NCBI RefSeq assembly: GCF_031769215.1
Contig: NW_026782057.1
Location: 62,001-126,000 of the forward strand
DNA length: 64,000 nucleotides
From: Ylistrum balloti
Lineage: Eukaryota
Direction of reading: 5' to 3'
Shown here: piece after piece, positions 1-38,300 of the stretch
Layout of the letters: each line of letters starts with the position of its first letter
How positions within the stretch are numbered: position 1 is the first letter of the stretch
Made by a program: the position numbers and the translations under genes
Notes under the pieces: generated by a model
Told to the model about the DNA's origin: nothing
Database searches by the model: none
What the model saw: only the letters and a program-made list of their open reading frames with translations

Positions 1-52
1 CATGGTTGATTATTCTAATGGATGCCGGTTCCTATGACTGTCTAACACTTAC

Positions 53-143
53 CTGTATTAATACACACAATATTGCCAGACGAAAGTTCAGTACATCTCT
101 GTCCGGACCCACATGGTTTTTCAGAACAGTTTTTAGCAATATC
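53..143 (-). CDS. Gene A exon 2 (identical to gene B exon 2); the rest of the gene lies outside the window
   Basis: Exact reverse complement of 35540-35630 with intact AG (145-144) and GT (52-51). Confidence 0.85.
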
Positions 144-1279
144 CTGGAATAAATCGAAATAAAAAATTGTATTAAATTTTAGGATCAGTGCATCTCCTAT
201 TTATCATTGAACATCTGCTTCGATCAGGTTTGATGCCTCCTAGGCTTCCATAATTTAAACCCTCAACATTTATGACGACACCTTGAACAGTAAAATAGCC
301 ATGTGATACAGTTTGATTTAGTACTTAGCGTATCTAATTATATTTTTTCTTTAAAAAAATGTTAATCACTTGTTCCTCTTCTGTATCATATACATAATAT
401 CAAAATTCGTCACATTTTTTAAAAGGAAGAACCAATAAAATACAATTTTTATTTACTCTTTTAAGTCACAAATTAGATATACTTAAAATGTAGATGTTAC
501 ATAACAATACATGTTGTTTTACTGAAATAGATATGCTGAACAATGCATATCTACCGTTACTTTACGATACATGTGTGGGCAATTCAATTACAAAACAACA
601 AGCCTCCCTTGTCAATGAATGGAAGAGGTAGACCTCCATTAATGTAAGAACCAGTGTCGATGTTAAGGCTAGGGTTCGAAGAGCGAACAATAACCTTTTA
701 TCACTAGAACAAATGTACTCAGAGACCTTCATTCTAAGTTCATGTGCTGAATAATGAATACTTGCCGTCTCTGATCTTTTTAAACATGTACGTAAAGGGC
801 ATTATTTAAAAAACATGTCAGGAATACTAGCTGTCATTAAACCCGGCCTCGTTCTGTGCATGTACTCAGATACCTTCTTTCAAAAGTAAAGAGTGAATCC
901 AACCTCTTGTATCTGAACATTTTACCCAAAATTATGATTAAAGTACATAGTTAATTCCTTATGACAAACTAAGCAATACGATAGTATTCATGGACCTTAT
1001 TTAATAGGTTAAGGTATTTTTATGTATATTTTCTAACAAAATCATGTAAATGCGTTCTCAATTGACAGGTTTAACATGGATCTAAGCACATGAAATTCTG
1101 GCAGAATAAGACATTTAAATACCACAGAAGCTGATCTTAAGAATATATACGAAGGTAAAGGTATAAAATGCAGAATGGTTTTCATGATGTTACTGAGCCA
1201 TAAAGAGTCGATAAAATGAAAAAAAAAAAAAAAAAAACATAGTAGTTTTTAATATACACTTAAAAACAATGGAACGATA

Positions 1280-1790
1280 TTTGTGAGGATCTTTAATTCG
1301 TTGAAGATGACTGTTTCCCATCATGCTCTATGATTAGCGTGGTTATTCACATTTTTATATTGTCATTTTTTTATTTCTAGAAAGCGACATTCCTGCTTCA
1401 CCAACCAATGGTGTTCACATGTTGCAATTGATTTGGTATTTAGTGGTTTGATCCAAATATCATCATTTTTGTGCAAGATGTCGGCAACTGCAGAAAAACT
1501 CACAATTGAAGGTTTGGAGATTGATGAAGATTATTGGAAAGTTTTACGGTCGTCATAATGTTCTCATTGGGAATTATTCTATCTTATTTTGCAACATCGA
1601 ATTCAACGTTAGTGTTGCATGTTGGTATGTTTGGCGGTTCTGTGACATGAAATGTGTCGACGGTGAAGAAGACGCTCGCCCTTTCGGAACACTTTGTGCA
1701 TCCTCCTTGCACTTTTTCGTGGGATCGCCGTGTAAGTTATATTTTTGAATTTGAATTAAGATTAGTGGACATGTCAATGTTTTACTTGAT
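1280..1790 (+). mobile_element. Penelope-like RT C-terminal fragment plus 3' tail
   Basis: A single frame from 1326 reads LYD*RGYSHFYIVIFLFLESDIPASPTNGVHMLQLI...KFYGRHNVLIGNY. Confidence 0.72.
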
Positions 1791-3175
1791 ATTTTATTTA
1801 GAATAATAGAATTGACAGGTTTTTTTCAATCATCATATATGAATTTATATGTCTCAAAGCTAGAAATCTCTCATAAACCAATAACTAGAAACAAAATCTA
1901 ACTTAAATCGTTCGTTAAAAAAGAATCACCACTGAATTGATTAGTGTGCCACTCGACCTATGAAACAACACCGGCAATAAAGAAATACAGGTGAAAAAAC
2001 CAATGTCAGTAAATGTTCAACTATATATATATATATCAATAGCAAAGGACGTCCAATATAGAAAAATAGAGCCTAGATATGGTCTTATTATAAGCAGAGG
2101 TTTGGGAGGAAACAGGAGACAAGAAGACGAGGTCATATTCGAGGAGATGAGTCGGTGGGCGTATTCAGTGTTAAAAAGTATTGAGAAAAAAAATTTCGAC
2201 CGAGAGAAAAGTAACTAGAATCTAGTTTGGACCACGAAGAACAATGGAAGAACGAGCCTATAAAAACAATTAAAATGTAGTTACAAAACAAAAACACAAA
2301 GCATCCATAAAGATGTTCAGAGAATTCTAAAAACACACAAAAGTAAAACTATATTCAAATACTGTTTAAGAATCAGACACACGTATTATAGCCAAATTAT
2401 GAAAATAACTGCATAATACAACTGTTTCATGATTCTAAGTATGGTCATTGACGGTAAGAGCTGAAATTTATTAAACCTAGGATACCCGTTGTTATAAAAC
2501 GATTGATAGGGTAGGTTTGTTGTGAAATATGAAGCCCCAGACAAGATGAGAATTCGAAGAAATCTATGAATATATCGTGACAGTTATTTCATTACTCCTT
2601 AAGGAGACTCGACCCTTTCACAATTAATATAAAGATTATCTTGAAACTTTTACAGAATGATTATGTTACCTTGGGAATGTGATTTTCTGAAAATCTAAAC
2701 ATTCAAGTGAGTTGTAAAATTTTTGGTGAAAACGCCAAAAAACTTATCTTTCTCGAAATTCAATTTTTTATTCATTGCATTTTCTTGCAAGATTTTAGAA
2801 GGTCATTAAAAAATGATAAACAGAAAAAAGAAATCTATATATACTTTGCAAGTATTTAATTTATGAAAAAAATCCCAAGCAATATTTAAAAAGTAGGCTA
2901 TATTGATATCAACAGACTTCAATATTTACACCTATACAATCACATAACACATAGATGTAAAAACTATAATAGAATGGTTCCTATGGTAGGATGCCTTCCT
3001 TGCAATTATCAGGCACCTTTCTGGGCGGGTAGTGTTATTGATATATACAGTCATACTAAATTGACCCTTTTATAACAGCATCATGATATATAAATATATT
3101 TAAAGAGAATAAAATCAACACGACAATTGTATTCCGCTAACGTTTTCAGGCCTAACGGCCATCACCAGGTGACAC

Positions 3176-6100
3176 ATTTATAATAACATCTTGGTAACGA
3201 CATTGTGACGTCATACATATTACCTAACAACTATAAATGCAAGTTAATGTTTTGGAAAATCGTTAACTCATAATTGATTAATAACAAACGCCCATAAATG
3301 TAATGTCAATATAATGCAAACGATAACGTTATCTCCCACCCTAAGTTGTTGGATGCAAGATGGTTATCAAAATATCAATAATGTTTTACACAAATCCATT
3401 TATGTTTTGGACTCTAGACACTGAACGTGTATGTGATTGTAACGAATACTACTGCGCGTCACACTCCAAGGAAAGTAGTCTACTTATACATCATAGCCGC
3501 ATTCTAAATGAGGATTGTTTGATTAAAAATAAGAAAATTTACTGTAAGAAATGTTAAATGTATGTGTAGTTACAATAAAAAGTAATTTGATAAAAAAAAC
3601 CCAGTTAAATGCACAATATATATATTTAAATATAATTTTGCATATGATCAAATAGTCCCCACAATCGTCAACTCACCCAAAAAAAAGTCGTCCCATAAAA
3701 TTGACAATTTCCACTTACGGACTAGAGTTAATAAACGGCGCCAATCTCAAATAGGTAGTCAGTTTTGCATATCTAACTAATGCAATTTTACAATAGGTCG
3801 TAATATTATGCCCAAACTAATATGTATGTCCAGAATGTGTTTTCTTGAATTTATATGTATGATATATAATGATATATGATATTTCTTTCATTCTCGTTAA
3901 TTATTTGTTAAAGAAAAAAATTACATAAAACACTCGTTGAAATTTGGCTCGTCTTGATTTACATAAATTCATGATAACATTTGCATTTTCTTTAATTTTA
4001 TGTTGCTTTAAGGTTTGTTCGAAATCTGAAGTAAAATAGTCCCCAACTGTCAAATTTGCTATAATTTACTTATTTATGCTTATGAATAAACGTAAAGGAC
4101 ACTGTAGTACTATGACGATGTTGAATTACATTAAGCAATAAATGTTTTCATGAGTGCCAGTTTGTGATGTCACACGCGCATTGACGTGCTAATGTTTACA
4201 TACGTTTAGGAAATATTAACAGAACAACAACAGTATGACTTTCACCTGGTACGTGTACAGCATCACTGGTGATACCTACTGCTTTCAATTGTGCATGCGT
4301 TGTAATAGATGTATTTATACATCCATAGGCAGGACTTTCCGGCGTATTTTAGGTCATTACCATTGACAGAGCACATATCTCGATCTTGGATTGGGTAATA
4401 AAAATCATTTGATCAGTCCTGGATGATATGCATTTACAGGTAACATAACCTGATTAAATAATAATTCCAAATAAGAGGACTGACTTATTCCTCTGTTCAG
4501 CAACAAGCTCCAATTTGTGCCTAGACTAGAATTTCGCTGAGGAGGAGCTTCATACAGGGAAAGGTTACTTGTTTGTTCAAGCCGCATTTTAATGTTTTCT
4601 CAACGTTCCAAGAACCATTAATATAGTTAGTTCACATAGAAACAAGAAAAAACAAATGGACAGGGTATTAATGATGGAGAAAATAATTTATAATAACATC
4701 TTGGTAACGACATTGTGACGTCATACATATTACCTAACAACTATAAATGCAAGTTAATGTTTTGGAAAATCGTTAACTCATAATTGATTAATAACAAACG
4801 CCCATAAAAGTAATGTCAATATACAGCAAACGATAACGTTATCTCCCACCCTAAGTTGTTGGATGCAAGATGGTTATCAAAATATCAATAATGTTTTACA
4901 TAAATCCATTTATGTTTTGGACTCTAGACACTGAACGTGTATGTGATTGTAACGAATACAACTGCACGTCACACTCCAAGGAAAGTAGTCTACTGATACA
5001 TCATGGCCGCATTCTAAATGAGGATTGTTTGATTAAAAATAAGAAAATTTACTGTAAGAAATGTTAAATGTATGTGTAGTTACAATAAAAAGTAGTTTGA
5101 TAAAAAAAAAAAAAAAAAAAAAAACCAGTTAAATGCATAATATATATATTTAAATATAATTTTGCATATGATCAAATAGTCCCCAGAATCGTCAACTCAC
5201 CCAAAGAAAAGTCGTCCCATAAAATTGACAATTTCAACTTCCAGACTAGAGTTAATAAACGGCACCAATCTCAAATAGGTAGTCAGTTTTGCATATTTAA
5301 CCAATGCAATTTTACAATAGGTCGTAATACTACGCCCAAACTAATATGTATGTCTAGAATGTGTTTTCTTGAATTTATATGTATGATATATAATGATATA
5401 TGATATTTCTTTCATTCTCGTTAATTATTTGTTAAAGAAAAAAATTACATAAAACGCTCGTTAAAATTTGGCTCGTCTTGATTTACATAAATTCATGATA
5501 ACATTTGCATTTTCTTTAATTTTATGTTGCTTTAAGGTTTGTTCGAAATATGAAGTAAAATAGTCCCCAACTGTCAAATTAGCTATAATTTACTTATTTA
5601 TGCTTATGAATAAACGTAAAGGACACTGTAGTACTATGACGATGTTGAATTACATTAAGCAGTAAATGTTTTCATGAGTGCCAGTTTGTGATGTCACACG
5701 CTCATTGACGTGATAATGTTTACATACGTTTAGGAAATATTAACAGAACAACAACAGTATGACTTTCACCTGGTACGTGTACAGCATCACTGGTGATACC
5801 TACTGCTTTCAATTGTGCATGCGTTGTAATAGATATATTCATACATCCATAGGCAGGACTTTCTGGCGTATTTTAGGTCATTACCATTGACAGAGCACAT
5901 ATCTCGTTCTTGGATTGGGTAATAAAAATCATTTGATCAGTCCTGGATGATGTGCATTTACAGGTAACATAACCTGATTAAATAATAATTCCAAATAAGA
6001 GGACTGACTTATTCCTCTGTTCAGCAACAAGCTCCAATTTGTGCCTAGACTAGAATTTCGCTGAGGAGGAGCTTCATACAGGGAAAGGTTACTTGTTTGT

Positions 6101-6210
6101 TCAAGCCGCATTTTCATGTTTTCTCAACGTTCCAAGAACCATTAATATAGTTAGTTCACATTAAAAAACAAGAAAAACTAATGGACAGGGTATTAATGAT
6201 GGAGAAAATA
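3176..6210 (+). repeat. Direct tandem duplication, ~1.51 kb unit (3176-4685 and 4686-6210), left arm only
   Basis: ATTTATAATAACATCTTGG starts at both 3176 and 4686; duplicated ORFs at 3360/4870 and 4405/5929. Confidence 0.93.
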
Positions 6211-6263
6211 ACAATAAGATATTTAAAAATGGAAAAATAATAATGAACGAATTAATGCAGTAG

Positions 6264-7790
6264 ATGTTTGTAATAAACAGTGACATCTTGCTCTGCACCA
6301 TCAGAAAACTAAGAAAAGGAAATGTATATCAACCGTGTAATCTCGCCCTGAAAACCGATCCTACTAACTTCTTTGTGATAGTCGAACTTACAAAACAAGC
6401 TTGCAAGGTTTCACATGACGCTGAATGCCAAAAAAGGTTTGGAAAGCTAGAACGTAGCACCACTACTAGCTAACCCAGATGCCAAAAAACCTTACACATT
6501 GTACACCGATGCCAATGATACGTGTATTTGAGTATGCCTCATACAGATGTCATAAAATGGTGTAAAAATGGCGCTTCACTATTTGCCGCTAAGGCTCAGC
6601 CATTCACAAACAAAATGACCTGTCAAAGAATTGGAAGTGTTCTTTGCAATAAGATTACTTAATGCCAATTTTGTCCTCAAGACAGATCACAAACTAAAAT
6701 ATATCTAAATTCGCAGATGAACAACAAAAAGATAAAATGTAGCGCTAGGGTTGAAACAGCGCTGTCACGAAAATCCGACAATGGCGGTGACAAAAACAAA
6801 GAAACCTCTAAGGAGCTTGTGGACGAGTAACACGAAATAGAAACTCGCGCAATAGAAATAAGCATATTGAACTCTAATAAGTTTGATCCGGGAGAACACG
6901 TAACTCGCGACAAAGATGCACCTGATAAACTCAGCAAACCAGAGTGGAGCATAACAGGAATATACAAAAGAAACAGGGCAATGTTAAAGATATACAAATG
7001 TAGTAAGAATTAATTGCAGTCAAACAGTGGGAATGCTATTAAGATGGAGGAGAAACGTCACTTGGTCATTGATGATCTTCTCTATAACTAAACTAACGAA
7101 GATTCGGGCGATTCAAGATTATATTTGTACATTCCTTAGGAACTGGAAATTTTAGTTATCAAATAGTACCACAATCTCCTTGCCCTTTAATAACAGTTAT
7201 GACTTTATAAAGATTATTATTTTCCCCCAAATACGAAGCGGAAATTGTAGACGTCAACACAAGAACTACTTCTGTACCCATTTGCAAAGATTGGCTTAGC
7301 CTTTCAATGTCCTTACCTAACAACACTGTCAGGCAATAAATAAAAAGTTCATTGACCTGTACTGAACGGCCAGAAACATTCAGCCTGTCAGATCAATCAG
7401 CTGATAGCATTGTATAACCCATCATCAAAGAGATATTTCCAAGGTACGGTTATCCCTTATAGATTATCACAGACAATGGAAATGAAATTGTCAACAAAGA
7501 GCAGCATTGTATATCTAATATGTTTCTACATCCTACCACTGTCAACAAAACAATGGCAATGTAGATGGGTATCCATGAACTCTATACGTTGTTCTGGAGA
7601 AAAAATAGAAGATGATGTACAGACAAGGGACGTATATCTCAACTAAACCTTGGAAGTGAATCAGGATAGTCAATAACTAGTCGACGATGTGTTACCGTTG
7701 TTACAACTGAGATGCAACACTACAATAAGACACTGTTATTCAAACAATATGACGACCTGTATTACATTGGGAAAACAGATCAAGGCCATT
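6264..7790 (+). mobile_element. Older, heavily decayed Gypsy pol remnant (RT thumb, RNase H, integrase); mirrored at ~31835-33253 (-)
   Basis: Broken frames read PLLANPDAKKPYTLYTDAND (RNase H), FVLKTDHK, PFAKIGL and EIFPRYG..IITDNG (integrase). Confidence 0.8.
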
Positions 7791-8619
7791 CAACTTGTGT
7801 GCGATAAATTGTATATTGTAGCAAAATGCATGTTCCATCACCTGATGCAATGGAAGACCAGTGTTAAACGTAATGGTACATCTGACTGTTACGGACGATC
7901 ATATTGCGACATTCTTGAAACCCACCCAACTTCAAGGCGCCCTGATTATGAAAGGTTAAGGAGGAATATGAGTGCCTCCACCAACAGTTAGGGATGTCGG
8001 AGGGAGCATTGTAATGGTAATCCTATACCTGGACAGTATAACCTTGATTTCCATAATTATAATTTGTTTGTAATGGAATTTCAATGGTGGTTTTGGTCAA
8101 AAGTTAATTGGACCAAATTTGAATAATTGTATTTTAACACGCGATATTGTATTGACATCCGAATAATGGATTTCAAATGATTATTCAATATAAAATAGGA
8201 CACTTCAAAAGTGTTGTACTCCCTAGAAAAGAATGAAAAAACGATGTAATCAGAGTGGTGGAAATGTACTATTAATAAAGAATTGTATTTCATATCTGTT
8301 GATAATTCGTTTTAATACCTTTATACCAGTCACTATTGACAGCCGACTTGTTCACTATGCTAAAGACATTATTATCATATTATCCTACGTTCCCCCTTAG
8401 TTCTCGTAATTTTATTTGCTATGCAAATGTGATATTTGCAAGAAATAGAAAAAAATATATACTTTGGTTCTTTGAACACATGATATGTTGATCGGAAACT
8501 TAAATAGTCAAACAAACAAATACGATTTTATTGCACATGATACAACTGTACATTTGTGGAGCGTTTCTAGAAGCACACTGAATCCATTTTTAATTATCTT
8601 AATGACTATTCAGATAGGA

Positions 8620-9240
8620 ATTCACCAGGGAGAGTTAACCCAAATTCTGGTATAAATATATTCGGTTTTACATTGATTAACTTTTATAAAACTACGGATC
8701 TTTGTATTATGAATGGTAGGGACATTGATAGTTCCTCAAATGACTTTACACAATGTGGATCGAATGACATGAGTGTGATTGATTACTTGATAATGCCTTT
8801 TGTTTCATTCTAGTGGAAAAAATTATTGTCGGTTATTTTACTGAATTCTCCAATCATTCACATTTATACATTCATTTTCATACTGAAACAATGTCACTTC
8901 TGATGATCCTGTAGTTCATGATTTCGTCGGCGTTGAAGGCCCAAAATACGTTTAGAGTGAGGAAGTTTAACATTTATTGATGGACCTCCGGAAGTGAATT
9001 CAGATAGGTTACAACAACAAGACGAAATTAGGGACACACTAAATCAGGATTCCATTGATAATGGAAAAAATTTACTAGGGAATTTATACAATGGAACCCC
9101 TTTTCAAAAAACGTTGTGTGGATATTATATATTAGTAATGTTGAACGTTCAAATGTTAAGTCTAAAAAGAAGAAACCATGGTTTAACAAGGAATCCAGAA
9201 TTTCAAGCAATATTTAGTAGCTTTACATATATTTGACATA
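8620..9240 (+). mobile_element. Decayed non-LTR (LINE) APE-endonuclease/ORF2 fragment; mirrored at ~30377-30997 (-)
   Basis: Reads LINFYKTTDLCIMNGR...DFTQCGSNDMSVIDYLIM...FTEFSNHSHL, matching the C-terminal NGR / SxIDY / SDH motifs of AP-like endonucleases (recognised from memory). Confidence 0.6.
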
Positions 9241-10055
9241 TATCACACGCTACTTTTACATAAAAATAATCTTAAAGCATTGAAAATAAGAATAAGATAA
9301 AACATTTTCTCATAATCATAATCCAAATTCAAATTCAATAAAACTACAGGGAAACTAGAACAAAAGAAAGATCTTCAAAGAGACTCCTGAAAAACTACAA
9401 GGAGAATAAGACAAGGCGATACGGAAGAGTAAGCGTGTTCTGCTTTTATCGACGAAACCTACCAAGTAAATAATTATTAATCTAAGCTAGTAATGCCATG
9501 TTAGACAGTGCCTAACACTTTAAAATTCTGCACAACACGAAAACAACATTTAGATTTAATGCATGTTAAAGAAAGAAATTTTGGCGATGGTAATAATTAT
9601 ATATCGGTGTTGAACTACAGTAAGACGTATTTGTTTTCATCAGTACCATTTTCAACAATATAACAATAGTACAGTCAACACCTGGTACGTAACAGAATCA
9701 TCGTTGATTTTCCCGAGTTATTCTGGTTAAAACCGTTGACAGAGCACACCACCTCGCTCTTGAACCGACTCAAAAACATAATTAGATAACCTCTTGATGA
9801 TGTGACTGTACATATCATATAACCTTATGAACTATTAAGGGTTTGTTAATTTGATTTTAATTTTTGTGAGTAGTTTTGAAATAAGTATCATCAACAAAAC
9901 GTACAAAAATGTTTTTTCTTCTGTTTTTAGTCTCTCATTTTCAATGACAATAGGTTAGCCGTTGGTTTTGAAAGATTCAAATGGCATGAAGTCTAAACAT
10001 AAGGTAACAGGTACTATGCTTTCCCAAACGCTATCTACAACTATATAACATTTAC

Positions 10056-19654: not shown

Positions 19655-19770
19655 TATATATATATATATCTGTGTGTGTGTGTTTGTGAGGGTGTGTGAG
19701 GGTGTGTGAGGGTGTGTGTATGTATGTGTGTGTTTCTGAAGGTGTGTGTGTGTGAGGGTGTGCGTCTGTG
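19655..19770. repeat. Compound (TA)n/(GT)n/(GAGGGTGTGT)n microsatellite in the palindrome spacer
   Basis: Directly visible. Confidence 0.85.
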
Positions 19771-25500: not shown

Positions 25501-28500
25501 AGAATAAGCATACTGATTATAGCTGAACAATCATATATTATACACACATGTCCCGCAGTAATTGATTTTGGATTTTCATGGTCAAACATTCTTTTGTTGA
25601 ATCAACTGAGGAGCTCGATCGATTTCGAAGAGAAAGAGTAGATAACATCAATATACTGAGATCGAGTTCCAATGTTTTATTTTATGCTGTTGCAAAGAGT
25701 TGATAACCTGATGACAAGATTCGTGTCATCTTACCACTGTATAAACAGTATATTCTCACGAAATCTGATTTCACTATTAATGTGACGTCAATATTACATA
25801 CAGTTAAGAACGGCCGCACCTGAAAATAATATTCTTACTTCCGGGCTTGCAGAGCCTGTACAAACAATCGCTTCCTGTCGCTGGTGATATCTAACCCGAA
25901 TCCGACAAAAAACTTTCTGTCGTTATTGAATTGATAAGAATTCACTCCACCATGATCAGTTCACGTGATACGGAATGAATCAAGCTATATTCGATAAATC
26001 ACAACTGGTAAAAGTAAATTCTAGGAGGTATTATTCTTGTAATCGATTTGCTGATGACCCAAGGATCACGGTGCGTGGTAACCTACTTTACAGTCGTAAA
26101 TGTGTTCTAATTGATTAGGAATGTATTTGTCATATTCTAACTCGCTTGCGATAGACCGCTTGGAAACGGAAAGCAACATAAAAACACTACCTTCACGTTC
26201 GTGAAGCTGCTAGAAGGATTTCAAAAAAGAGATATGTACGCCGTTCAATAAATAATTTATCACATATATAGCCCTACTCTGTATCCATTTTCTCCTTACA
26301 ACTGATCCTCAAAATGTTTTGGCAAATTTGTTTCCCTTCAAATTTTGGAGATCAGGCCATGCAACTACTGTTCGGTTTCGTTTCAAAATAAAAAAAAACC
26401 AAATCATCGTCCAAACACAAGTAAATCTACACCGACTCAAATCATCAGATATATCAACAAAGATCGAGTAGTTTTAGAAGGTCACTTTTCAAAAGACATA
26501 TTATATATATATATATATATTTTAAAATTTGATATTTCAGTATTATAGACCTACATGTCCAATTGGAAGCAAACAAGAGTCATTCCGATAACTTTATATT
26601 GCTTTCATTGTGTTACAATAAGTCTCAAGATTTCTGAACATCTAAAAGTGTGCAGTCTAAGATCGATTAAAGTTATACCCAAATTGAATTGTACACACAA
26701 GTGAATATCACCTTTCAATATGATCTATAATTCGATTCAATATAGTAAAACAATTTTATACTTCTTTTTCTATTGTCACCGTTTTATTTTATTAACCAAA
26801 GACACCTATTTGAGCCGAGTGAATGTATCTATTAATAATGAAACATTTCTTTAATGGTTGACCTGACACAGATATGAATATATCGATTCTTGAGCTGATT
26901 CAGCGATTTGTTTCTTGTCGTTGGCTTCTCATTTAAGTAAATGTCTCATTCATGCACTGTTGTGTCAAGACTTTATCTGTTTCTTATCTGTATGGATTCA
27001 TAAGAAGAGGGTGAGTATGTATAAATACTTTGCTTCATTGAAGATCACGTTCCGAACGATTTTTGTTTTAATTATTATATGATATTATTTTCTTGACCTG
27101 ATAGCGGAGGATTCTAATAGTGCCTTCAGTAATAACAAATATATTCATAAGTGTATCAAATATTTTAGTATCACGAGTGAAATTTACAAAAAATATTCAC
27201 TAGTGAAATATATGTGTTATTACTGTAGATACTATTAGATATTCTATTTACTATATTTTAACAAGAAAAATAGCCAAATTACTGGCATGTTCACAACAAA
27301 TATAAAAAATATAAAAAGAGGAAGCTGACTCAGGTTTTTGTGGACACTAATATCTCATTATAACTTCACAGCAGGCGACAAAATATAGTCATAAATATAT
27401 ACGTAAACACATTCATTGTAAATATATTTTCATTTTCACATAGAAAATGGTACTTATTCTTGTCACTAAGAGACAAATTTTGCTGTATAATGTTCAAAGA
27501 AAGTTTAACCTGTGACAAGTTACTATGCAGCTGAAAAATATGGCGGCAACCTACAATTGTCGCTGTTGATGACATAAATCCCCTTGAAATGTCTAAAATG
27601 TTAGCTCCAAATTCAAGTTTTTCGGTTGGAGATTGGATTTGATATCTGATAAGGTAATTTGCGTTGCATAGTTTACTGACTTTCTTTTTGACAAGTAAAA
27701 AAATACACTTTAATCAATAAGATATTTCTCTAAATGTTACTTGGAAAAATCCAATAATGTTTATTTTGTGACAGAAAACATATCTCAAATTTATCTGTAT
27801 AATTTCCGTACCTTTATTCTAATTATTTGATTATTTGAATGATATGTATACTTATTATAGTAGCAAGGAGAAGGCAGTCATTGGTTATGCCGGTTTCTCA
27901 ATTCCTTTTGTTTTTGAAATCGTAACAATAAAATATTCTGAAATCAAAATTAGCTGAACCGCATCATACTGATAGTTACTTCATATATAATTCATCAGTG
28001 ATGCTGAAGCCTTAAACGTGCGCAGACATGAACGGATATTTTCTTAGACTCTCACATAATAGTACTTGTGCTGTATAAGCCATTTTCTTCGTTTGTTTCT
28101 AACCACGGTTGAACTGTAGACCTAAAACATTGTACTTGTAAAAAGATAGAACTACTAAAATGTTATTCGTCAAATTCAGTATTTGGCTAACGTTTTCCTT
28201 TCTAGTGAGTGTCGCTTTCCCCAGCTTTGCTTTATAGAGACATTGATTAAGAGCATCTGTTTTGTTTTTTCTTTCTTACCTACATAGATTCTTATAATGA
28301 AACTAACAAGGAGAGTTATCTTCCATGCTATATCATAAACCTGATGATTTCAATTTCATCTTCAAGCTATGGTGTATACATGTCGAGGTTGATTCGACAT
28401 CGTTCCCAATATCACTATTTTAGTACAAAATGTCGGCATCACATGGTTTTAAGGAATGCTGGTTGATGGAGATTATGGGGAAATTTGACAGTAGTCATAT

Positions 28501-29029
28501 TTTGAATTTGGAAATATGTGCAATATGACGTTTAACTTGTTTGATGTTCGTTTGTAATCTTGTTGTTTACCTCGTTCTCATTTAAGAACGGAACATTGCA
28601 AACTTTGATGAACCAATGTAAAAGATGGCTGTTGATGATGAAAATGCTAACCCTTCAGGAACATCTGATCGTAAATGCATTAGAGTTGTAATTCTTTCTT
28701 TTGTTTACATTTTGTCCTAATTTGAGTTTAAATCGAGACTGAAATGTTAGTATTTGTTTGTTGCTTTTTCCGAAACAGTGTCTGCAATGCTTTCTATACA
28801 GAAAATCTGTTTCCCTTCTAGGTTTAACGGTAGTCACTCGAAAAACGCCAGCTCAGGACAGAGGTGTCATCGTAATTCATGCAATTGGACTGCACAATCT
28901 TTATATGGGTGTGAAATTCGCCTGAAGCATTATATCTGGATTAGAAAGTGACTTCATCTCATTTATATTGGTCGTGATATCGACATTTAATATGCGAGTA
29001 TTGCATTTTTGTACGATCAACGACTGATA

Positions 29030-29350
29030 ATGTTTATCTTTGGAATTGTTGTGTTGGCAATGCCAGCCCTGGTATTTCTTGATGTTAGCGTGTCAGATGA
29101 GGATATCATATACCTGAATTATGTAAAGTACGTGCGTGGATTTCGTTTACATAAGGGAGTATTCCGTGTGATTGATATCTCGTCTTATACATCATGTGTA
29201 AGGGAATGTCTATTTCGTGTACATTGCCATGGGATCACGTACCATCGGACTCGATTCTACTGCCACCTGGTTAACCAGTCTACTGACCTACAAGTGGTCA
29301 GTGATAATAACATAATCTCAAGCCATCCAACTGACTGGAATCCACCTAAG
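29030..29350 (+). CDS. Gene B exon 1: signal peptide + PAN/apple domain
   Basis: MFIFGIVVLAMPALVFL hydrophobic leader; SCVRECLFRVHCHGITYHRTRFYCHL (C-x3-C-x5-C-x11-C PAN core); ends WNPPK|GTAAAT. Confidence 0.88.
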
Positions 29351-32300
29351 GTAAATGTTATATAGTTGTACATAGCGTTTGGGAAAGCATAGTACCTGTT
29401 ACCTTATGTTTAGACTTCATGCCATTTGAATCTTTCAAAACCAATGGCTAACCTATTGTCATTGAAAATGAGAGACTAAAAACAGAAGAAAAAACATTTT
29501 GGTACGTTTTGTTGATGATATTTATTTCAAAACTACTCACAAAAATTAAAATAAAATGAACAAACCATTATAAGTTCATCAGGTTTTATTACATGTACAG
29601 TCACATCATCAAGAGGTTATCTAATTATGTTTTTGAGTCGGTTCAAGAGCGAGGTGGTGTGATCTGTCAACGGTTTTAACCAGAATAACTCGGGAAAATC
29701 AACGATGATTCTGTTACGTACCAGGTGTTGACTGTACTATTGTTATATTGTTGAAAATGGTACTGATGAAAACAAATACGTCTTACTGTAGTTCAACACC
29801 GATATATAATTATTACTATCGCCAAAATTTCTTTCAGAGAAATTAGAAAATTAAAGAATCTTTTGAAAATAAATGTTGCTAATAATTTAACGTCCATTTA
29901 CAGATAACGATAATAAGCGACCATGGTGATACCTGGGGTGTCATAATTATCCACATCATTGTACAACTAGTATTTAACATAGAAATATGTACAATTAACC
30001 AATTATGATATATTGTAATACATTAACATGCATTAAATCTTAATGTTGTATTCGTGATTGTATAGTTTAAACTATGCAACCTGTGATTGTGCAGAATTCT
30101 AAAGTGTTAGGCACTGTCTTACATGGCATTACTAGCTTAGATTAATAATGATTTACTTGGTAAGTTTCGTCGATAAAAGCAGAACACGCTTACTCTTCCG
30201 TATCGCCTTGTCTTATTCTCCTTGTAGTTTTTCAGGAGTCTCTTTGAAGATCTTTCTTTTGTTCTAGTTTCCCTGTAGTTTTATTGAATTTGAATTTGGA
30301 TTATGATTATGAGAAAATGTTTTATTTTATTCTTATTTTCAATGCTTTAAGATTATTTTTATGTAAAAGTAGCGTGTGATATATGTCAAATACATGTAAA
30401 GCTACTAAATATTGCTTGAAATTCTGGATTCCTTGTTAAACCATGGTTTCTTCTTTTTAGACTTAACATTTGAACGTTCAACATTACTAATATATAATAT
30501 CCACACAACGTTTTTTGAAAAGGGGTTCCATTGTATAAATTCCCTAGTAAATTTATTTATGCTATTATCAATGGATTCCTGATATTTTCGACATGTTGTT
30601 GTAACCTATCTGAATTCACTTCCGGAGGTCCATCAATAAATGTTAAACTTCCTCACTCTAAACGTATTTTGGGCCTTCAACGCCGTCAAAATCATGAACT
30701 ACAGGATCATCAGAAGTGACATTGTTTCAGTATGAAAATGAATGTATAAATGTGAATGATTGGAGAATTCAGTAAAATAACCGACAATAATTTTTTCCAG
30801 TAGAATGAAACAAACAAAAGGCATTATCAAGTAATCAATCACACTCATGTCATTCGATCCACATTGTGTAAAGTCATTTGAGGAACTATCAATATCCCTA
30901 CCATTCATAATACAAAGATCCGTAGTTTTATAAAAGTTAATCAATGTAAAACCGAATCCATTTACACCAGAATCTGGGTTAACTCTCCCTGGTGAATTCC
31001 TATCTGAATAGTCATCAAGATAATTAAAAATGGATTCAGTGTGGTTCCAGAAACGCTCAAGAAATGTACATTTGTATCATGTGCAATAAAATCGTATTTG
31101 TATGTTTGACTATTTAAGTTTCCGATAAACATATCATGTGTTCAAAGAACCAAAATATATATTTTTTTCTATTTCTTGCAAATATCACATTTGTATAGCA
31201 AATAAAATTACGAAGAACTAAAGGGGAACGTAGGATAATATGATAATAATGTCTTTAGCATAGTGAACAAGTCGGCTGTCAATAGTGAATGGTATAAAAA
31301 TATTAAAAGAATTATCAACAAATATGAAATACAATTCTTTATTAATAGTACATTTCAACCACTTTGATTACATCGTTTTTTCATTTTTTTCTAGGGAGTA
31401 CAGCACTTTTGAAGATTTCTATTGTCTATTGAATAATCATTTGGAATCCAACATTCAGATGTCAATACAATATCGCGTGTTAAAATACAATTATTCAAAT
31501 TTGGTCCAATTAACTTTTGACCAAAACCACCATTGAAATTCCAAAACAAACAAATTATAATTATGGAAATCAAGGTTATACTGTCCAGGTGTAGGATTAC
31601 CATTACAATGCTCCCTCCGACATCCCTAACTGTTGGTGGAGGCACTCATATTCCTCCTTAACCTTTCATAATCAGGGCGCTTGAAGTTGGCTGGGTTTCA
31701 AGAACGTCGCAATATGATCGTCCGTAACAGTCAGATGTACCATTACGTTTAACACTGGTCTTCCATTGCATCAGGTGATGGAACATGCATTTTGCTACAA
31801 TATACAATTTATCGCACACAAGACAAGTTGTAACAACGGTAACAAAGCGTCGACTAGTTATTGACTATCCTGATTCAATTCCAAGGTTTGGTTGAGATAT
31901 ACGTCCCTTGTCTGTACATCATCTTCTATTTTTTCTCCAGAACATCGTATAGAGTTCATTGATACCCATCTACATTGCCATTGTTTTGTTGACAGTGGTA
32001 GGATGTAGAAACATATTAGATATACAATGCTGCTCTTTGTTGACAATTTCATTTCCATTGTCTGTGATAATCTATAAGGAATAACCGTACCTTGGAAATA
32101 TCTCTTTGATGATGGGTTATACAATGCTATCAGCTGATTGATCTGACAGGCTGAATGTTTCTGGCCGTTCAGTACAGGTCAATGAACGACACTTTTTATT
32201 TATTGCCTGACAGTGTTGTTAGGTAAGGACATTGAAAGGCTAAGCCAATCTTTGCAAATGGATACAGAAGTATTTCTTGTGTTGACGCCTACAATTTCCG

Positions 32301-35300
32301 CTTCGTATTTGGGGAAAAATAATAATCTTTATAAAGTCATAACTGTTATTAAAGGGCAAGGAGATTGTGGTACTATTTGATAAGTAAAATTTCCAGTTCC
32401 TAAGGAATGTACAAACATAATCTTGAATCGCCCGAATTTTCGTTAGACCAAGTGACGTTTCTCCTCCATCTTAATAGCATTCCCACTGTTTGAATGCAAT
32501 TAATTCCTACTACATTTGTATATCTTTATCATTGCCCTGTTTCTTTTGTATATTCCTGTTATGCTCCACTCTGGTTTGCTGAGTTTATCAGGTGCATCTT
32601 TGTCGCGAGTTACGTGTTCTCCCGGATCAAACTTATTAGAATCAAGGTGCTTATTTCTATTGCGCGAGTTTCTATCTCGTGTTACTCGTCCACAAGCTCC
32701 TTAGAGGTTTCTTTGTTCTTGTCACCGTCATTGTCGGATTTTCGTGACAGCGCAGTTTCAACCCTTGCGCTACATTTTGTATCTTTTTGTTCTTCATCTG
32801 CGAATTTAGATATATTTTAGTTTGTGATCTGTCTTGAGGACAAAATTGGCATTTAGTAATCTTATTTTTGCAAAGAACACTTCCAATTCTTTGACAGGTC
32901 ATTTTGTTTGTGAATGGCTGAGCCTTAGCGGCAAATAGTGAAGCGCCATTTTTACACCATTTTATGACATCTGTATGAGGCATACTCAAATACACGTATC
33001 ATTGGCATCGGTGTACAATGTGTAAGGTTTTTTGGCATCTGGGTAAGCTAGTAGTGGTGCTACGTTCAAGCTTTCCAAACCTATTTTGGCATTCAGCGTC
33101 ATGTGAAACCTTGCAAGCTTGTTTTGTAATTTCGACTATCAGAAAGAAGTTAGAAGGATCGGTTTTCAGGGCGAGATTACACGGCTGATATACATTTCCT
33201 TTTCTTAGTTTTCTGATGGTGCAGGGCAAGATGTCACTGTTTACTTTAAACATCTTCAGCATTAATTCGTCCATTATTATTTTTTTCCAATTCTAAATAT
33301 CTTATTGTTATTTTCTCCATCATTAATACCCTGTCCATTAGTTTTTCTCTTTTTTTATGTGAACTAACTATATCAATGGTTTGTGGAAAGTTGAGAAAAC
33401 ATTAAAATGCGGCTTGAACAAACAAGTACTAACATGGCAAAATAACCTTTCCCCGTGCGAAGCTCCTCCTCAGCGAAATTCTAGTCTGGGCACAAATTGG
33501 AGCTTGTTGCTGAACAGAGGAATAAGTCAGTCCTCTTATTTGGAATTATTATTTAATCAGGTTATGTTACCTGTAAATGTACATCATCCAGGGTTGATAA
33601 CATGATTTTGTACCTAATCCAAGAACGAGGTATGTGCTCTGTCAATGGTAATGACCTAAAATACTCCAGAAAGTCCTGCGTATGGATGTATAAATGCATC
33701 TGTTACAACGCATGCACAATTGAAAACATTTACTGCTTAATGTAATTCAACATCGTCATAGTATTACAGAGTCCTTTACGTTTATTCATCAGCATAATTA
33801 AGTTAATTATAGCTAATTTGACAGTTGGTGACTATTTTACTTCAGATTTCGAACAAACCTAAAAGCAACATAAAAAAATAATGAAAATGCAAATGTTATC
33901 ATGAATTGATGTAAATCAAGCCGAGCCGAATTTCAGTGTTTTATGTATTTTTTTTTTACTTTTACAAATAATTAATGAGAATGAAAGAAATATCATATAT
34001 CATTATATATCATACATATAAATTCAAGAAAACACATTCTGGACATACATATGTTTTAATAACGTTATTAGTTTGGGCGTAATATTACGACCTATTGTAA
34101 AATTGCATTAGTTAGATATGCAAAACTGACTACCTTGAGATTGGCGCCGTTTATTAACTCTAGTCCGGAAATGGAAATTGTCAATTTTATGGGACGACTT
34201 TTCTTTGAGTGAGTTGACGATTCTGGAGACTATTTGATCATATGCAAAATTGTATATATATATATATTGTGCATTTAACTGGGTTTTTTTTTTATCAAAT
34301 TACTTTTCATTGTAACTTCACATACATTAAAAAAAATTTACAATAAATTTTCTTATTTTTAATCAAACAATCAACATTTAGAATGTGGCCGTGATGTACC
34401 AGTAGACTACTTTTCTTGTAGTGTAACTTGCAGTTGTTTTCGTTGCAATCACATACACGTTCAGTGTACATTTTACATTTTATCGACTCCTTATTGCTCA
34501 GTAACATCATGAAAGCCATTCTGCATTTTATACCATTACATTCGTAAATATTCTTAACATCAGCTTCTGTGGTATCTAAAGGTCTTATTCATGTGCTTAG
34601 ATCCATGTTAAATTTGTCAATTGAGAACGCGTTTACATGATTTTGCTAGAAGATATACATAAAAGACTATAACCTATTAAATAAGGTCCATGAATACTAT
34701 CGTATTGCTTAGTTTGTCATAAGGAATTAACTATGTACTTTAATCATAATTTTGGGTAAAATGTTCAGATACAAGAGGTTGAATTCACTCTTTACTTTTG
34801 AAAGAAGGTATCTGAGTACATGCACAGAACGAGGTCGGGTTTAATGACAGCTAGTATTCCTGACATGTATTTTAAATAATGCCCTTTACGTACATGTTTA
34901 AAAAGATCAGAGACGGCAAGTATTCATTATTCAGCACATGAACTTAGAATGAAGGTCTCTGAGTACATTTGTTCTAGTGATAAAAGGTTACTGTTCGCTC
35001 TTCGAACCCTAGCCTTAACATCGACACTGGTTCTTACATTAATGGAGGTCTACCTCTTCCATTCATTGACAAGGGAGGCTTGTTGTTTCATAATTGAATT
35101 GCCCACACATGTATCGTAAAGTAACGGTAGATATGCATTGTTCAGCATATCTATTTCCGTAAAACAACATGTATTGTTATGTAACATCTACATTTTAAGT
35201 ATATCTAATTTGTGACTTAAAAGAGTAAATAAAAATTGTATTTTATTGGTTCTTCCTTTTAGAAAATGTGACGAATTTTGATATTATGTAAATGATACAG

Positions 35301-38300
35301 AAGACGGACAAGTGAGTAGCATTTTTTTTTAAAGGAAAAATATGATTAGATACGCTAAGTACTAAATCAAACTGCATCACATGGCTGTTTTACTGTTCCT
35401 GGAGTCGTCGTAAATGTTGAGGGCCTAAATTGTGGAAGCCTAGGAGGTATCAAACCTGATCGAAACAGATGTTCAATCGTTAATAGGAGATGCACTGATC
35501 CTAAAATTTAATACAATTTTTTATTTCGATTTATTCCAGGATATTGCTAAAAACTGTTCTGAAAAACCATGTGGGTCCGGACAGAGATGTACTGAACTTT
35601 CGTCTGGCAATATTGTGTGTATTAATACAGGTAAGTGTTAGACAGTCATAGGAACCGGCATCCATTAGAATAATCAACCATGATCATTGGCCAGCTGGCA
35701 TTTATATTCAAATTTAGTTATTGTCTCCTGTTCAATTTCCATTGTCTCGAACATTGTCATTCTTACCAGCTTTAGCTGTCCAGTTGAAAGTCATTCATTC
35801 GATAATTTGCTGGTATCAACATATTATTTGGATAATAAATCAGTAAATTGAATCGTCACGCTTCAGTTGTCCTCTCCTTACAAAATTTCTGTAAATTTCA
35901 TACTTTGTCTCAATAGTATTCATTCGCAAACAATTGGTAGTCCGTGTACTGTGGCTCGGAAAAAAACTCTTTCCGTCTTTGTCTAGTTTTGTTTTTTGAG
36001 TTAACACGGTACAAAATCAATGAAAAGAATTAATATCTTAAGGAATGAAATTAAACAAGAGATTTATTTTGCAGGAAATGAACACACTCAGTATTCATTG
36101 TAGGTTTGATTTTAATACCTACTTTCATTTATTAACCACCATCTGCATATTCGATAATGAATGTGCTTACAATAAAGTTTTTATGAGAAGCAATAAAACA
36201 GCCAGACATAATGATAACGAACATCGAATACTCCTAACCAAAGATATTGCTGAAACAAGCATATTTCCCAAGGCGACAATGACACTTTCTCATAGTCTTC
36301 GTCACACGAAATCGTGTATTGTAAGTTTACCTGCCAGTTTTTTTTACACGGAAATCATGATACTAGATATTGTATTTTCAGGAATCAGGAATTATTCGAT
36401 TATATGTGGAAAGAGTGTTCTTTTTGGCTGCATTTTAGGAAAAGATCGATATAATAGTAGAAAAAAAGTCTGTCATGTTCCCGTTTTCAATTCTGGTGAA
36501 TGTTTGGGCATTGGTCAATAGAATTATTGAATATATGATCAATATATCTAAATTGAAATTGAAAAAAAATGACAAGAATGACTTGAATGTTGCTGATTTT
36601 AATGAACTTTTCGGAAAGATGTCTTTTGAAAACAAAGACAAACCAGTGAACAGAGACACACAGTAAGTCCCCTTGGATATTGTTATAGTCTGTCGGAAAC
36701 GTTTACCACAAAATTTACTGATGAATTCAATCATTCGTACAATTTCATTATTTGTCAGTATATTTTATCTTACTCTTAGAAAGAATGAGTTCTGAGTTCT
36801 CTAAAATCCACATTAAAAATTTTCGACTTGTCGAGTATACAGTAGCACAACAAAACTATTTTTATTACTGCTTTGATAATACTACGGGTCCAGGAGCCTG
36901 GAAAAACGATTGAGATGAATTAGACAATCAAGTTACAAAATTAAAAAAAATACAAAAAGTGGTTGATATATATTCTTTATTAAATATACGAATACTAACA
37001 ACGAGGTGGGGATGTCAGTGTCAGCCTTAACTGTTTAATTGTGATTTCCATTTCCACAGAATGTTCCGATCCGCCGGAAATGACGTTATCCACCACATCT
37101 AGTTTAAGGTCCGTTGGCATTACTATTAGTAACGAATACCTTTCTAACTCCTCATTCACAAACGTCACATGTGTAACGGAAAGCATCACATGTAAGGCAG
37201 ACAATACGTGGACAAGTCCGAAGTACACATTCAAACGTGAGTATGAAAAATTAATATTTCGAATTAAACATTCATGAGGATGTTTTCTTTCGATCAGATT
37301 TTGCATGGTTTAGTGTTTATTGGTAAATATTTGAAGTCGATAAGAAGTTTTTACACACTGCTGCAAGGCTATATACCTACCTCTGTAGTCAGTTTTGTCT
37401 GTCACGGAGAGAAGTGTACCTACACCTGTATGAGTATTGGGAACATTACCAGAGCAGTTCCTTGTACATACACTAGCCGATACTAGAAGACAGTACAGTG
37501 TCTAACTAAAGGTTTATGGTTGTCTTAACAACGTTCTAAAGAACGGATTGCCGTCATTTATTTCATATGATAATGCAGAGGACAGGTGTAGAGAAATATA
37601 TTGTTCTTTTCTACGTTTATGGTATTTGCTTTTCTGAATTATTGGAGGAAAAATGAATAAATATACGGTTGTTTATAGAAGTNNNNNNNNNNNNNNNNNN
37701 NNNNNNNNNNNNNNNNNNNNNNNNNNNNNNNNNNNNNNNNNNNNNNNNNNNNNNNNNNNNNNNNNNNNNNNNNNNNNNNNNNNNNNNNNNNNNNNNNNNN
37801 NNNNNNNNNNNNNNNNNNNNNNNAATGAAATAAAAACCTGCGGGGCGTTTCTTTGAATTTTTTGAAACGTTGTAAATATACCTAATAAACCATGCATAAT
37901 TTTACAATCAATGAAACTGCCGGGCGTTTGTTTTATTCTTTTTAAACATTGCAAACCTATCTCATAAAATTTGTAATTACTTTTATATTTTCTCAGCGTG
38001 TCCCTTGGAATTTCAAATTGTATCCGATGCCTATTGTATCCTGCTTGTGACAAATCAATCATTGACGGCAACCGACAGTGATGAGTACTGCCAGACAAAA
38101 GGAGGCCGACTTATCTGGATGACAAGCGTGGAAAAGTTCGATGCCGTCGAAGCCGTTATTAGTGAGTAGAATTATTTCAATACTTACCAAGCTATACATT
38201 TTGTCGTGTTTTAGATTTATAAAGCTCAATCGGAACACGTTTCATCTCAAATAGTGATGTGCAATATGAATCTGGACATGTTTGGTACTCATTACTTTGC

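What the first reader, a model, noticed from the sequence alone, without database searches (positions are those of the whole stretch)
1..35682. Giant inverted duplication (at least 14-19 kb arms, 1.9 kb spacer) placing two near-identical lectin-domain genes head-to-head
Seen: 1-~19330 is the colinear reverse complement of ~21221-35682, including introns, intergenic DNA and old transposon fossils. Genes A (ATG 10376, -) and B (ATG 29030, +) diverge from the centre with mirrored upstream regions. Inference: a fold-back or template-switch duplication, an arrangement that could allow arm-to-arm recombination, orientation flipping of the spacer and conversion. Prediction: gene A exons 3-5 lie roughly 1.4-4.2 kb before the window start. 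Alternative: two haplotypes of a heterozygous genome scaffolded in inverted orientation.
Basis: partly seen in the sequence, partly recalled or inferred. Interest (0 to 1): 0.75.

Follow-up and report, generated by a model that had tools for sequence, protein, structure and literature searches.

The report
Inverted duplication of scallop lectin gene
A saucer-scallop contig holds a 23-29 kb stretch twice in mirror orientation around a 1.9 kb unique centre, giving two intact head-to-head copies of a secreted lectin-type gene; this is a clean but fairly ordinary young gene duplication, and no sequencing reads have yet confirmed it.

Summary
Window 1-19328 is the colinear reverse complement of 21222-35682. 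With 14.7 kb fetched left of the window from the same record (Ylistrum balloti GCA_031769215.1, a 1.03-Mb contig), the full arms are 29.4 kb (L) and 23.2 kb (R, ending at 44404). They share 16 colinear blocks with 3.3% mismatch. The 1893-bp spacer is unique, all four junctions are sharp, and none has an N.

Each arm holds a complete five-exon, 320-codon PAN + C-type-lectin-domain gene (RefSeq LOC132547498 and LOC132547501, 96.9% identical).

Six of the ten amino-acid differences cluster in the lectin domain's binding-loop region. Arm identity is patchy (91-99.5%), which suggests arm-to-arm gene conversion.

The most likely reading is a real, lineage-specific inverted segmental duplication (about 0.75). 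A haplotig nested in a chimeric contig (about 0.17) needs two false gap-free joins, but it is not excluded.

This is a new member of a known kind, of moderate to low interest.

The parts
1..19328 (-). Left arm, the part inside the window. The full arm runs from window coordinate -10024 (read from L001) to 19328, 29,353 bp.
   Evidence: L001 is identical to window 1-20376.
19329..21221 (.). Unique central spacer, 1893 bp, non-coding.
   Evidence: sequence.
21222..44404 (+). Right arm, complete, 23,183 bp. 94% of it aligns to the left arm. It contains both N runs of the window.
   Evidence: Identity is 98% over the last 500 bp, then homology stops abruptly at 44404.
10056..10376 (-). Gene A exon 1 (signal peptide plus PAN domain). 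ATG at 10376.
   Evidence: The product equals P0001 = XP_060067239.1, LOC132547498. PAN_1 scores above the Pfam cut-off.
53..143 (-). Gene A exon 2 (short Cys-rich, EGF-like by eye, no Pfam hit). Exons 3-5 lie left of the window at -1757..-4691.
   Evidence: 100% identical to gene B exon 2, with AG/GT borders.
29030..29350 (+). Gene B exon 1 (signal peptide plus PAN domain).
   Evidence: 5 nt and 2 aa differences from gene A exon 1.
35540..35630 (+). Gene B exon 2 (Cys-rich linker).
37060..37236 (+). Gene B exon 3. Sushi-like by cysteine pattern only; the gene C counterpart gives only a sub-threshold Sushi hit.
37997..38161 (+). Gene B exon 4 (N-terminal half of the C-type lectin domain).
39687..39895 (+). 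Gene B exon 5 (C-terminal half of the C-type lectin domain, including the stop). It carries 7 nt and 6 aa differences from gene A.
   Evidence: The gene B model equals P0019 = XP_060067241.1, LOC132547501.
1224..3417 (.). Left-arm private insertion of about 2.2 kb. The right arm has an empty site at 34467-34471.
   Evidence: No clear terminal repeats.
3176..6211 (.). Left-arm private tandem duplication: two units of about 1.5 kb, 2.4% mismatch between them. It spans the right end of the 2.2-kb insertion, so it is younger than that insertion.
11940..13783 (+). Mostly left-arm private block holding a truncated LTR-retrotransposon integrase fragment (ORF 12055-12627).
   Evidence: rve and Integrase_H2C2 above cut-off.. 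The record annotates it as a 164-aa gene.
17440..18300 (.). Near-identical tract between the arms, 8 mismatches in 861 columns (right-arm partner about 22220-23080). Candidate gene-conversion tract.
   Evidence: No Rfam family. Not conserved in gene C or Pecten upstream DNA.
50997..60423 (+). Gene C, an older paralogue with the same five-exon plan, about 62% aa identity to gene B. It lies outside the duplication, on the same strand as B.

Best explanation
This is a genuine, lineage-specific inverted segmental duplication, palindrome-like in form. An ancestral segment of about 22-23 kb was copied in reverse orientation 1.9 kb from itself. The segment held one complete secreted PAN + Cys-rich + C-type-lectin-domain gene, with about 8 kb of upstream and 4.5 kb of downstream DNA. 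The result is two head-to-head genes, A and B, next to an older tandem paralogue, C.

Shown: the mirror structure, its four sharp junctions, the unique spacer, two intact and separately annotated genes, and later arm-private events (a 2.2-kb insertion, then a 1.5-kb tandem duplication, a retroelement fragment, and several 80-250 bp indels).

Inferred:
(i) The copy arose in one step by a replication template switch or fold-back repair event. Synthesis turned back on the sister or complementary strand after the spacer and returned to the flank at 44404/44405.
(ii) The arms have since exchanged sequence by gene conversion, which gives the patchwork of 99.5% and 91% tracts.
(iii) Both genes are functional. 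Exons are 1.45% diverged against 3.3% for non-coding DNA. They are diverging mainly in the ligand-binding loops of the lectin domain, as expected for bivalve recognition lectins.
For: Geometry: searches give 16 colinear inverted blocks, arms of 29,353 and 23,183 bp, and 3.3% mismatch.

Continuity: no N between the arms or at any of the four junctions (L001 has no N). The record is a 1,025,085-bp contig with unique sequence continuing on both sides: a glyoxalase-domain gene to the left, a satellite and gene C to the right.

Sharp ends: identity is 98% over the last 500 bp and then stops. The spacer is unique and asymmetric.

A single-copy locus cannot produce the junction at 21221/21222. The inner end of the segment would have to touch both ends of the spacer (reasoning).

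Time has passed since the copy was made. There are nested arm-private events, including a tandem duplication whose own units differ by 2.4% and a truncated integrase fragment.

Genes: both have 320 codons and GT-AG at every intron, and the models equal XP_060067239.1 and XP_060067241.1. Coding divergence is 14/963, against about 32 expected at the non-coding rate (P = 3e-4). Six of the 10 aa differences fall in residues 281-313 (scan-corrected P about 0.006), which align to the EPN-to-WND region of solved C-type lectin domains.

Conversion: the mismatch variance/mean ratio is 4.25 (P = 6e-28), and the longest perfect run of 270 bp was reached in 5 of 1000 shuffles.

Lineage-specific: A and B are 97% identical, but only about 62-64% identical to gene C and to the nearest Pecten maximus protein. 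In Pecten the family members sit in tandem on one strand.
Against: No read-level evidence was obtained. The share of 31-mers held by five public runs (0.67-0.71) is uninformative, because one arm plus the spacer alone would already give up to 0.79-0.81.

Bivalve assemblies are known to contain haplotigs nested inside chimeric contigs (eastern oyster). Allelic divergence of a few per cent with kb-scale indels is not unheard of in bivalves.

Both N runs of the window lie inside the right arm (chance about 0.09). That could mean this arm was harder to assemble.

The patchy identity and the clustered amino-acid changes would look the same for two divergent alleles. Mechanism (i) leaves no surviving signature that I could test.
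Confidence: 0.75

Rival explanations
1. Assembly artefact. The two arms are the two haplotypes of a single-copy, highly heterozygous locus, and one haplotig was built into the contig in inverted orientation next to its allele (a haplotig nested in a chimeric contig).
For: Nested haplotigs in chimeric contigs are documented in a bivalve reference assembly, where about 100 of 685 Mb were masked. The divergence of 3.3% plus kb-scale indels is within reach of very divergent bivalve alleles at immune-type loci (general knowledge, not measured here). Both N runs of the window fall inside the right arm. No reads could be laid. Another first-stage note reports a second large inverted duplication in this assembly (unchecked), which could point to a systematic artefact.
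Against: It needs two false joins, at 21221/21222 and 44404/44405, both made without an N inside a 1.03-Mb contig. A wrongly traversed heterozygous bubble would give a direct repeat, or would return to the same flank. It would not give a finite inverted copy followed by the opposite unique flank. A private tandem duplication whose own units have diverged by 2.4% and a degraded retroelement fragment imply long separate histories. RefSeq annotates two separate intact genes.
Confidence: 0.17
2. The duplication is real but arose in two steps. First a direct tandem duplication, as between genes B and C and in Pecten, then an inversion of one copy.
For: The family otherwise expands in tandem on one strand: gene C in the window, and two same-strand genes in Pecten maximus. 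Tandem duplication is the commonly reported route for bivalve lectin and C1q families (reference list of PMC10140915).
Against: It needs an inversion whose two breakpoints coincide with the ends of one copy to within the resolution seen here, since all four junctions are sharp. It also leaves the unique 1.9-kb spacer unexplained unless the spacer was part of the first event. No inverted repeat or transposon pair that could mediate such an inversion is present at the arm ends. One event explains what this route needs two for.
Confidence: 0.06
3. Library or read artefact. Fold-back chimeric long reads (for example a missed adapter or a strand switch) created a false palindrome.
For: Such artefacts do create inverted repeats in long-read assemblies (general knowledge).
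Against: They give identical arms with no spacer or a very short one. Here the arms differ by 3.3%, by 24 indels of 30 bp or more in the window part alone, and by 6 kb in length, and they are separated by 1893 bp of unique DNA.
Confidence: 0.01

Closest known systems
Genomic palindromes, i.e. inverted segmental duplications with a unique spacer (for example the gene-bearing palindromes of primate X and Y chromosomes)
   Same: Two long arms in mirror orientation around a short unique spacer. There is a complete gene copy in each arm. Identity along the arms is uneven in a way that fits arm-to-arm gene conversion.
   Different: Arm identity is about 96.7%, with kb-scale private insertions. That is far below the >99.9% of the classic sex-chromosome palindromes (from general knowledge), so any conversion here is local, not arm-wide. 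The genes are head-to-head and lectin-type, with no evidence of testis-type expression or sex linkage. The arms are small (23-29 kb).
Inverted duplications made by replication template switching or fold-back repair (FoSTeS/MMBIR-type events, fold-back inversions)
   Same: The copy lies inverted next to the original. A short unique stretch sits between them, with two sharp novel junctions and no mediating repeats at the breakpoints.
   Different: Those events are defined from fresh junctions with microhomology or small insertions. Here 3.3% divergence hides any such signature, so the likeness is in outcome and the mechanism is not shown.
Lineage-specific expansion of C-type-lectin-domain genes in bivalves (PMC10140915; PMC12842671)
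   Same: A secreted multi-domain protein with a C-type lectin domain has been duplicated recently next to an older paralogue. The amino-acid changes are concentrated in the binding-loop part of the domain.
   Different: The reported route is mostly tandem, same-strand duplication, whereas this copy is inverted. The lectin domain lacks the canonical EPN/QPD and WND motifs: TEL and LRD sit at the aligned positions. Sugar binding is therefore not implied.
Haplotigs nested in chimeric contigs of bivalve assemblies (eastern oyster, bioRxiv 10.1101/2022.08.29.505626)
   Same: Two diverged copies of one stretch lie close together in one assembled sequence of a bivalve.
   Different: Those were recognised by half-normal read depth, which could not be measured here. 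The present copies are inverted, finite, joined without gaps, and each continues into a different unique flank.

Membership tests
Inverted segmental duplication / genomic palindrome | Two colinear arms in reverse-complement orientation on one molecule | tested here: met
   16 colinear blocks, 21.4 kb of ungapped columns, 3.3% mismatch.
Inverted segmental duplication / genomic palindrome | Unique, non-duplicated spacer between the arms | tested here: met
   the spacer parts 19329-19677 and 19741-21221 match neither each other nor the rest of the window.
Inverted segmental duplication / genomic palindrome | Both arms end in different unique flanks at sharp junctions | tested here: met
   Outer ends at window -10024 and 44404, inner ends at 19328 and 21222.
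Inverted segmental duplication / genomic palindrome | Physical reality: reads span the junctions and each arm has normal depth | not testable with these tools
The word shares are uninformative.
Inverted segmental duplication / genomic palindrome | Ongoing arm-to-arm gene conversion | tested here: inconclusive
   variance/mean 4.25 and a near-identical 861-bp tract. Alleles or local constraint could mimic this. Constraint is unlikely because the tract is not conserved in gene C or Pecten.
C-type lectin domain proteins (Pfam PF00059) | Lectin_C domain above the curated cut-off | tested here: met
   39.5 and 42.1 bits against a cut-off of 22.6, residues 218-318; weak matches to solved CLEC4-type domains.
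C-type lectin domain proteins (Pfam PF00059) | Canonical Ca2+/sugar-site motifs (EPN or QPD, and WND) | tested here: not met
   alignment: TEL aligns to the EPS motif of CLEC4b1, and LRD sits at the WND position. The domain is therefore lectin-like, with no inferred sugar specificity.
PAN/Apple domain proteins (Pfam PF00024) | PAN_1 domain above the curated cut-off | tested here: met
   27.6-30.7 bits against a cut-off of 21.4, residues 34-90.
False duplication (haplotig) in an assembly | Copies joined through scaffold gaps, or reaching the end of a contig | tested here: not met
   no N at any junction, and both arms are internal to a 1,025,085-bp contig. Two N runs lie inside the right arm, not at its ends.
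False duplication (haplotig) in an assembly | Half-normal read depth over both copies | not testable with these tools
No other tool gives depth.

The most novel reading that the evidence does not exclude
The locus is an evolving autosomal palindrome in a bivalve recognition-lectin cluster. Arm-to-arm gene conversion keeps most of the two gene copies and parts of their shared upstream DNA alike, while selection holds the ligand-binding loops of the lectin domain apart. Recombination between the arms flips the 1.9-kb spacer as a population polymorphism. That would be a small invertebrate counterpart of the sex-chromosome palindromes, coupled to the diversification of an immune-type receptor.
Probability: 0.2. 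Interest if true: 0.5.

Novelty: new member of a known kind. Interest (0 to 1): 0.3.

Why it matters
If real, this is a well-bounded and datable example of how bivalve recognition-lectin families grow by a route other than tandem duplication. All four junctions are visible, an older paralogue sits alongside, and an outgroup arrangement is available for comparison. It is also a natural test bed for gene conversion against diversifying selection in an inverted repeat.

In practice, the two loci are 97% identical. Read mapping, expression counts and SNP calls for LOC132547498 and LOC132547501 will cross-contaminate unless the 14 coding differences are used.

If it proves to be a nested haplotig, it is a useful flag for the quality of this reference assembly, in which another large inverted duplication has been noted.

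Tried and rejected
1. Read evidence. The look-up of sequencing runs found five Logan-contig holders in two studies. I did not call it again, because the cap is a stated rule. Local scripts did still read those letters as part of larger strings: the k-mer count, and L001 used as a BLAST subject.

2. Word shares as a proxy for 'both arms present'. Rejected, because one arm plus the spacer already explains up to 0.79-0.81 of the words.

3. Logan contigs via protein look-up. The word search with exon 1 found nothing in the allowed length range, so that route was dropped.

4. Assembly method from the literature. No paper in the library describes this assembly; it is only cited by accession.

5. Polarity of the duplication (which arm is the copy). 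The flanks, the spacer and the upstream DNA show no alignable similarity to the Pecten locus apart from dispersed repeats. Polarity is left open. Gene B shares a strand with gene C, as in the Pecten tandem pair, which weakly favours A as the derived copy.

6. Junction microhomology. The junction sequences were read. Nothing beyond 1-5 bp of ambiguous overlap was seen, which is not interpretable at 3.3% divergence.

7. Structured RNA or another hidden function in the near-identical tract. No Rfam family scored anywhere, and the long ORFs in the shared upstream region have no Pfam family.

8. Terminal repeats or a target-site duplication around the 2.2-kb left-arm insertion. None was convincing.

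9. I did not fetch the record around gene B through P0019, and I did not read the L001 letters opposite the window's N runs. Either step would have looked up masked or gap letters from another copy.

Exons were searched by reference, and the full-length proteins used were database entries returned by tools (P0001, P0019, P0002). Exons were joined only inside local scripts, to check the frame, to compare with those entries and to count substitutions.


Full report
**What is there**

The window is AT-rich animal DNA (GC 0.30-0.38). Earlier notes of this scan call the genome a saucer scallop. A protein look-up places the window in Ylistrum balloti assembly GCA_031769215.1, contig JAUZWB010000224.1 (1,025,085 bp), at record positions 62,001-126,000.

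The seed search found 21 colinear inverted pairs of 201-1270 nt at 94-99% complementarity. BLAST chains window 1-19328 to 35682-21222. No N run lies between the arms. The only N runs are 37683-37823 and 41366-41496.

**The true extent**

The apparent end at 35682 is only the mirror image of the window start.

- A HMMER search with gene B exon 1, given by reference, returned two scallop proteins.
- The look-up of the better one (P0001) returned locus L001. It is 35 kb of the same record, identical to window 1-20376, and reaches 14,692 bp further left.
- The inverted homology continues through this extension to window coordinate -10024, matching window 35683-44404.
- The full arms are 29,353 bp (left) and 23,183 bp (right). 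They share 16 colinear blocks and about 21.4 kb of ungapped columns at 3.3% mismatch. 94% of the right arm and 74% of the left arm are aligned.
- All four junctions are sharp. At the outer ends identity is 98% over the last 500 bp and then stops within a base or two.
- The 4.7 kb further left, which ends in a glyoxalase-domain gene, has no counterpart to the right of 44404.
- The 1893-bp spacer has no internal symmetry and no copy elsewhere in the window. This was tested on its parts beside 19678-19740.

**The genes**

Each arm carries a complete five-exon gene of 320 codons with AG/GT at every intron.

- My exon model of gene A translates exactly to P0001 (XP_060067239.1, LOC132547498). My model of gene B translates exactly to P0019 (XP_060067241.1, LOC132547501). 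RefSeq names both 'uncharacterized protein'.
- Pfam finds a PAN domain (residues 34-90) and a C-type lectin domain (218-318), both above the curated cut-offs.
- The two short middle exons are cysteine-rich. They look EGF-like and Sushi-like by eye, but neither passes a Pfam threshold.
- When aligned to solved C-type lectin domains, the canonical Ca2+/sugar motifs are absent: TEL sits where EPN/EPS is found, and LRD where WND is found. This is a lectin-like domain with unknown ligand.
Gene A exons 3-5 lie 1.76-4.69 kb left of the window start, close to the predicted 1.4-4.2 kb.
- A third family member, gene C (about 50997-60423, + strand, about 62% identical to B), lies outside the duplication.
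- The nearest protein elsewhere is from Pecten maximus (62-64% identical). There, two family members sit in tandem on one strand, and no inverted copy is seen in the 10 kb upstream.
- The A/B duplication is therefore young and specific to the Ylistrum lineage.

**What happened after the copy was made**

The left arm has gained the following:

- a 2.2-kb insertion (1224-3417);
- a 1.5-kb tandem duplication (3176-4686 / 4686-6211). It overlaps the end of that insertion, so it is younger, and its own units already differ by 2.4%;
- a block with a truncated LTR-retrotransposon integrase fragment (11940-13783; rve and Integrase_H2C2 domains);
- several 80-250 bp pieces.

The right arm has private pieces at 29837-30086, 28182-28425, 23115-23326 and within 26572-27195.

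Coding sequence is less diverged than the rest: 14 differences in 963 nt, against about 32 expected at the non-coding rate (P = 3e-4). The few changes are mostly amino-acid changing (11 non-synonymous, 3 synonymous, dN/dS about 1 on very small counts). Six of the ten amino-acid differences lie in residues 281-313 (scan-corrected P about 0.006). That region aligns to the binding-loop part of the lectin fold.

Mismatches along the arms are strongly clumped:

- the variance/mean ratio is 4.25 (P = 6e-28);
- the longest perfect run is 270 bp, reached in 5 of 1000 shuffles;
- one 861-bp tract at 17440-18300 has only 8 mismatches, next to stretches at 93%.

That tract has no Rfam family, no Pfam-bearing ORF, and no similarity to the upstream DNA of gene C or of the Pecten genes. 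Selective constraint is therefore a poor explanation, and recent sequence exchange between the arms is a better one.

**Real duplication or assembly artefact**

I could not obtain the decisive evidence.

- Five public runs from two studies hold the central 6 kb.
- I did not call the tool again.
- The runs' word shares (0.67-0.71) do not help. A sample holding only one arm plus the spacer could still reach 0.79-0.81, because the inner arm ends share many 31-mers.

The case for a real duplication therefore rests on the anatomy of the assembly.

- The copies are finite and lie inside a 1-Mb contig.
- They are joined without any N at the four junctions.
- Each continues into a different unique flank.
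- With a single-copy locus, the inner end of the segment could touch only one end of the spacer. The haplotig reading therefore needs a false join at 21221/21222 and a second one at 44404/44405.
- A wrongly walked heterozygous bubble would give a direct repeat or lead back to the same flank.
- A fold-back read artefact is excluded by the 3.3% divergence, the 6-kb difference in arm length and the unique spacer.

Against this:

- haplotigs nested in chimeric contigs are documented in an oyster reference assembly;
- bivalve alleles can be very divergent (general knowledge, not measured here);
- both N runs of the window fall inside the right arm (chance about 0.09).

I put a real duplication at about 0.75-0.8 in total, with the one-step inverted route favoured over tandem duplication plus inversion. 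I put the nested haplotig at about 0.17.

**Mechanism**

Shown: the mirror structure, the junctions, the intact pair of genes, and the order of some later events.

Inferred:

- The origin is a single replication template switch or fold-back repair event. This explains the unique spacer and the absence of mediating repeats at the ends, but it has left no testable signature at this divergence.
- The arms later exchanged sequence by gene conversion.
- The lectin binding loops are diverging under selection.

Which arm is the copy is open. Gene B shares orientation with gene C, like the Pecten tandem pair, which weakly favours A as the derived copy. Non-coding DNA does not align to Pecten.

With K of about 0.034 and an assumed 1-5e-9 substitutions per site per year, the event would be a few to roughly fifteen million years old. 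This is a rough figure resting on an assumed rate.

**Comparison and novelty**

In layout this resembles gene-bearing palindromes and inverted duplications made by template switching. In content it is one more lineage-specific duplicate in the much-expanded bivalve C-type-lectin repertoire (PMC10140915, PMC12842671).

It differs from classic palindromes by its much lower arm identity. It differs from the usual bivalve pattern by being inverted rather than tandem. Both genes are already annotated, but I found no description of the inverted architecture in the papers searched.

It is a new member of a known kind. Interest is modest unless conversion, spacer flipping or functional divergence is demonstrated.

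**Constraints observed**

- N runs were not filled, and the L001 letters opposite them were not read.
- The record around gene B was deliberately not fetched, for the same reason.
Joins were made only inside local scripts.
- The retroelement fragment was only described.

Noticed in passing
window 45450-48766: A 33-bp satellite of about 100 copies (87% matches) starts 1 kb outside the right arm's outer junction, between genes B and C. No counterpart was seen beyond the left arm's outer end.
   Followed up: partly
window 52229-52685 and 58851-59855: Tandem arrays of a 39-bp unit (about 12 copies) and a 26-bp unit (about 39 copies) lie inside introns 1 and 4 of gene C. The Pecten maximus relative also has a large tandem array in intron 1 (L002 17009-24944).
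   Followed up: no
window 12055-12627 (L001 7747-8241, - strand): The truncated LTR-retrotransposon integrase fragment private to the left arm is listed among the called genes of the public record as a 164-residue product. It is a transposon remnant called as a gene.
   Followed up: partly
window 9311-9493, 15686-15865, 24733-24910, 30127-30311: A dispersed element of about 185 bp (about 75% identity between copies) occurs twice in each arm at mirrored positions. It is an old repeat that was already present twice before the duplication.
   Followed up: no
window 37683-37823 and 41366-41496: Both N runs of the window lie inside the right arm. The left-arm counterparts in L001 have different lengths (about 258 and 59 bp by coordinates only) and carry no N. 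Whether the runs are gaps or masks is unknown. The letters opposite them were not read.
   Followed up: no
window 19678-19740: The TG-rich microsatellite in the spacer tripped the reads tool's filter, which cost the only read-laying run. Any later laying must be done beside it.
   Followed up: yes
L001 34305-35068 (about 13.9-14.7 kb left of the window start): A glyoxalase-domain gene is the next annotated gene beyond the left arm. It marks the unique left flank.
   Followed up: no
L002 (Pecten maximus LR736846.1, 34,419,781-34,464,623): Two 322-residue family members lie in tandem on one strand 4.7 kb apart. The first exon of the second is 89% identical in protein to that of the first, so Pecten has its own recent, direct duplication of this gene.
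   Followed up: partly
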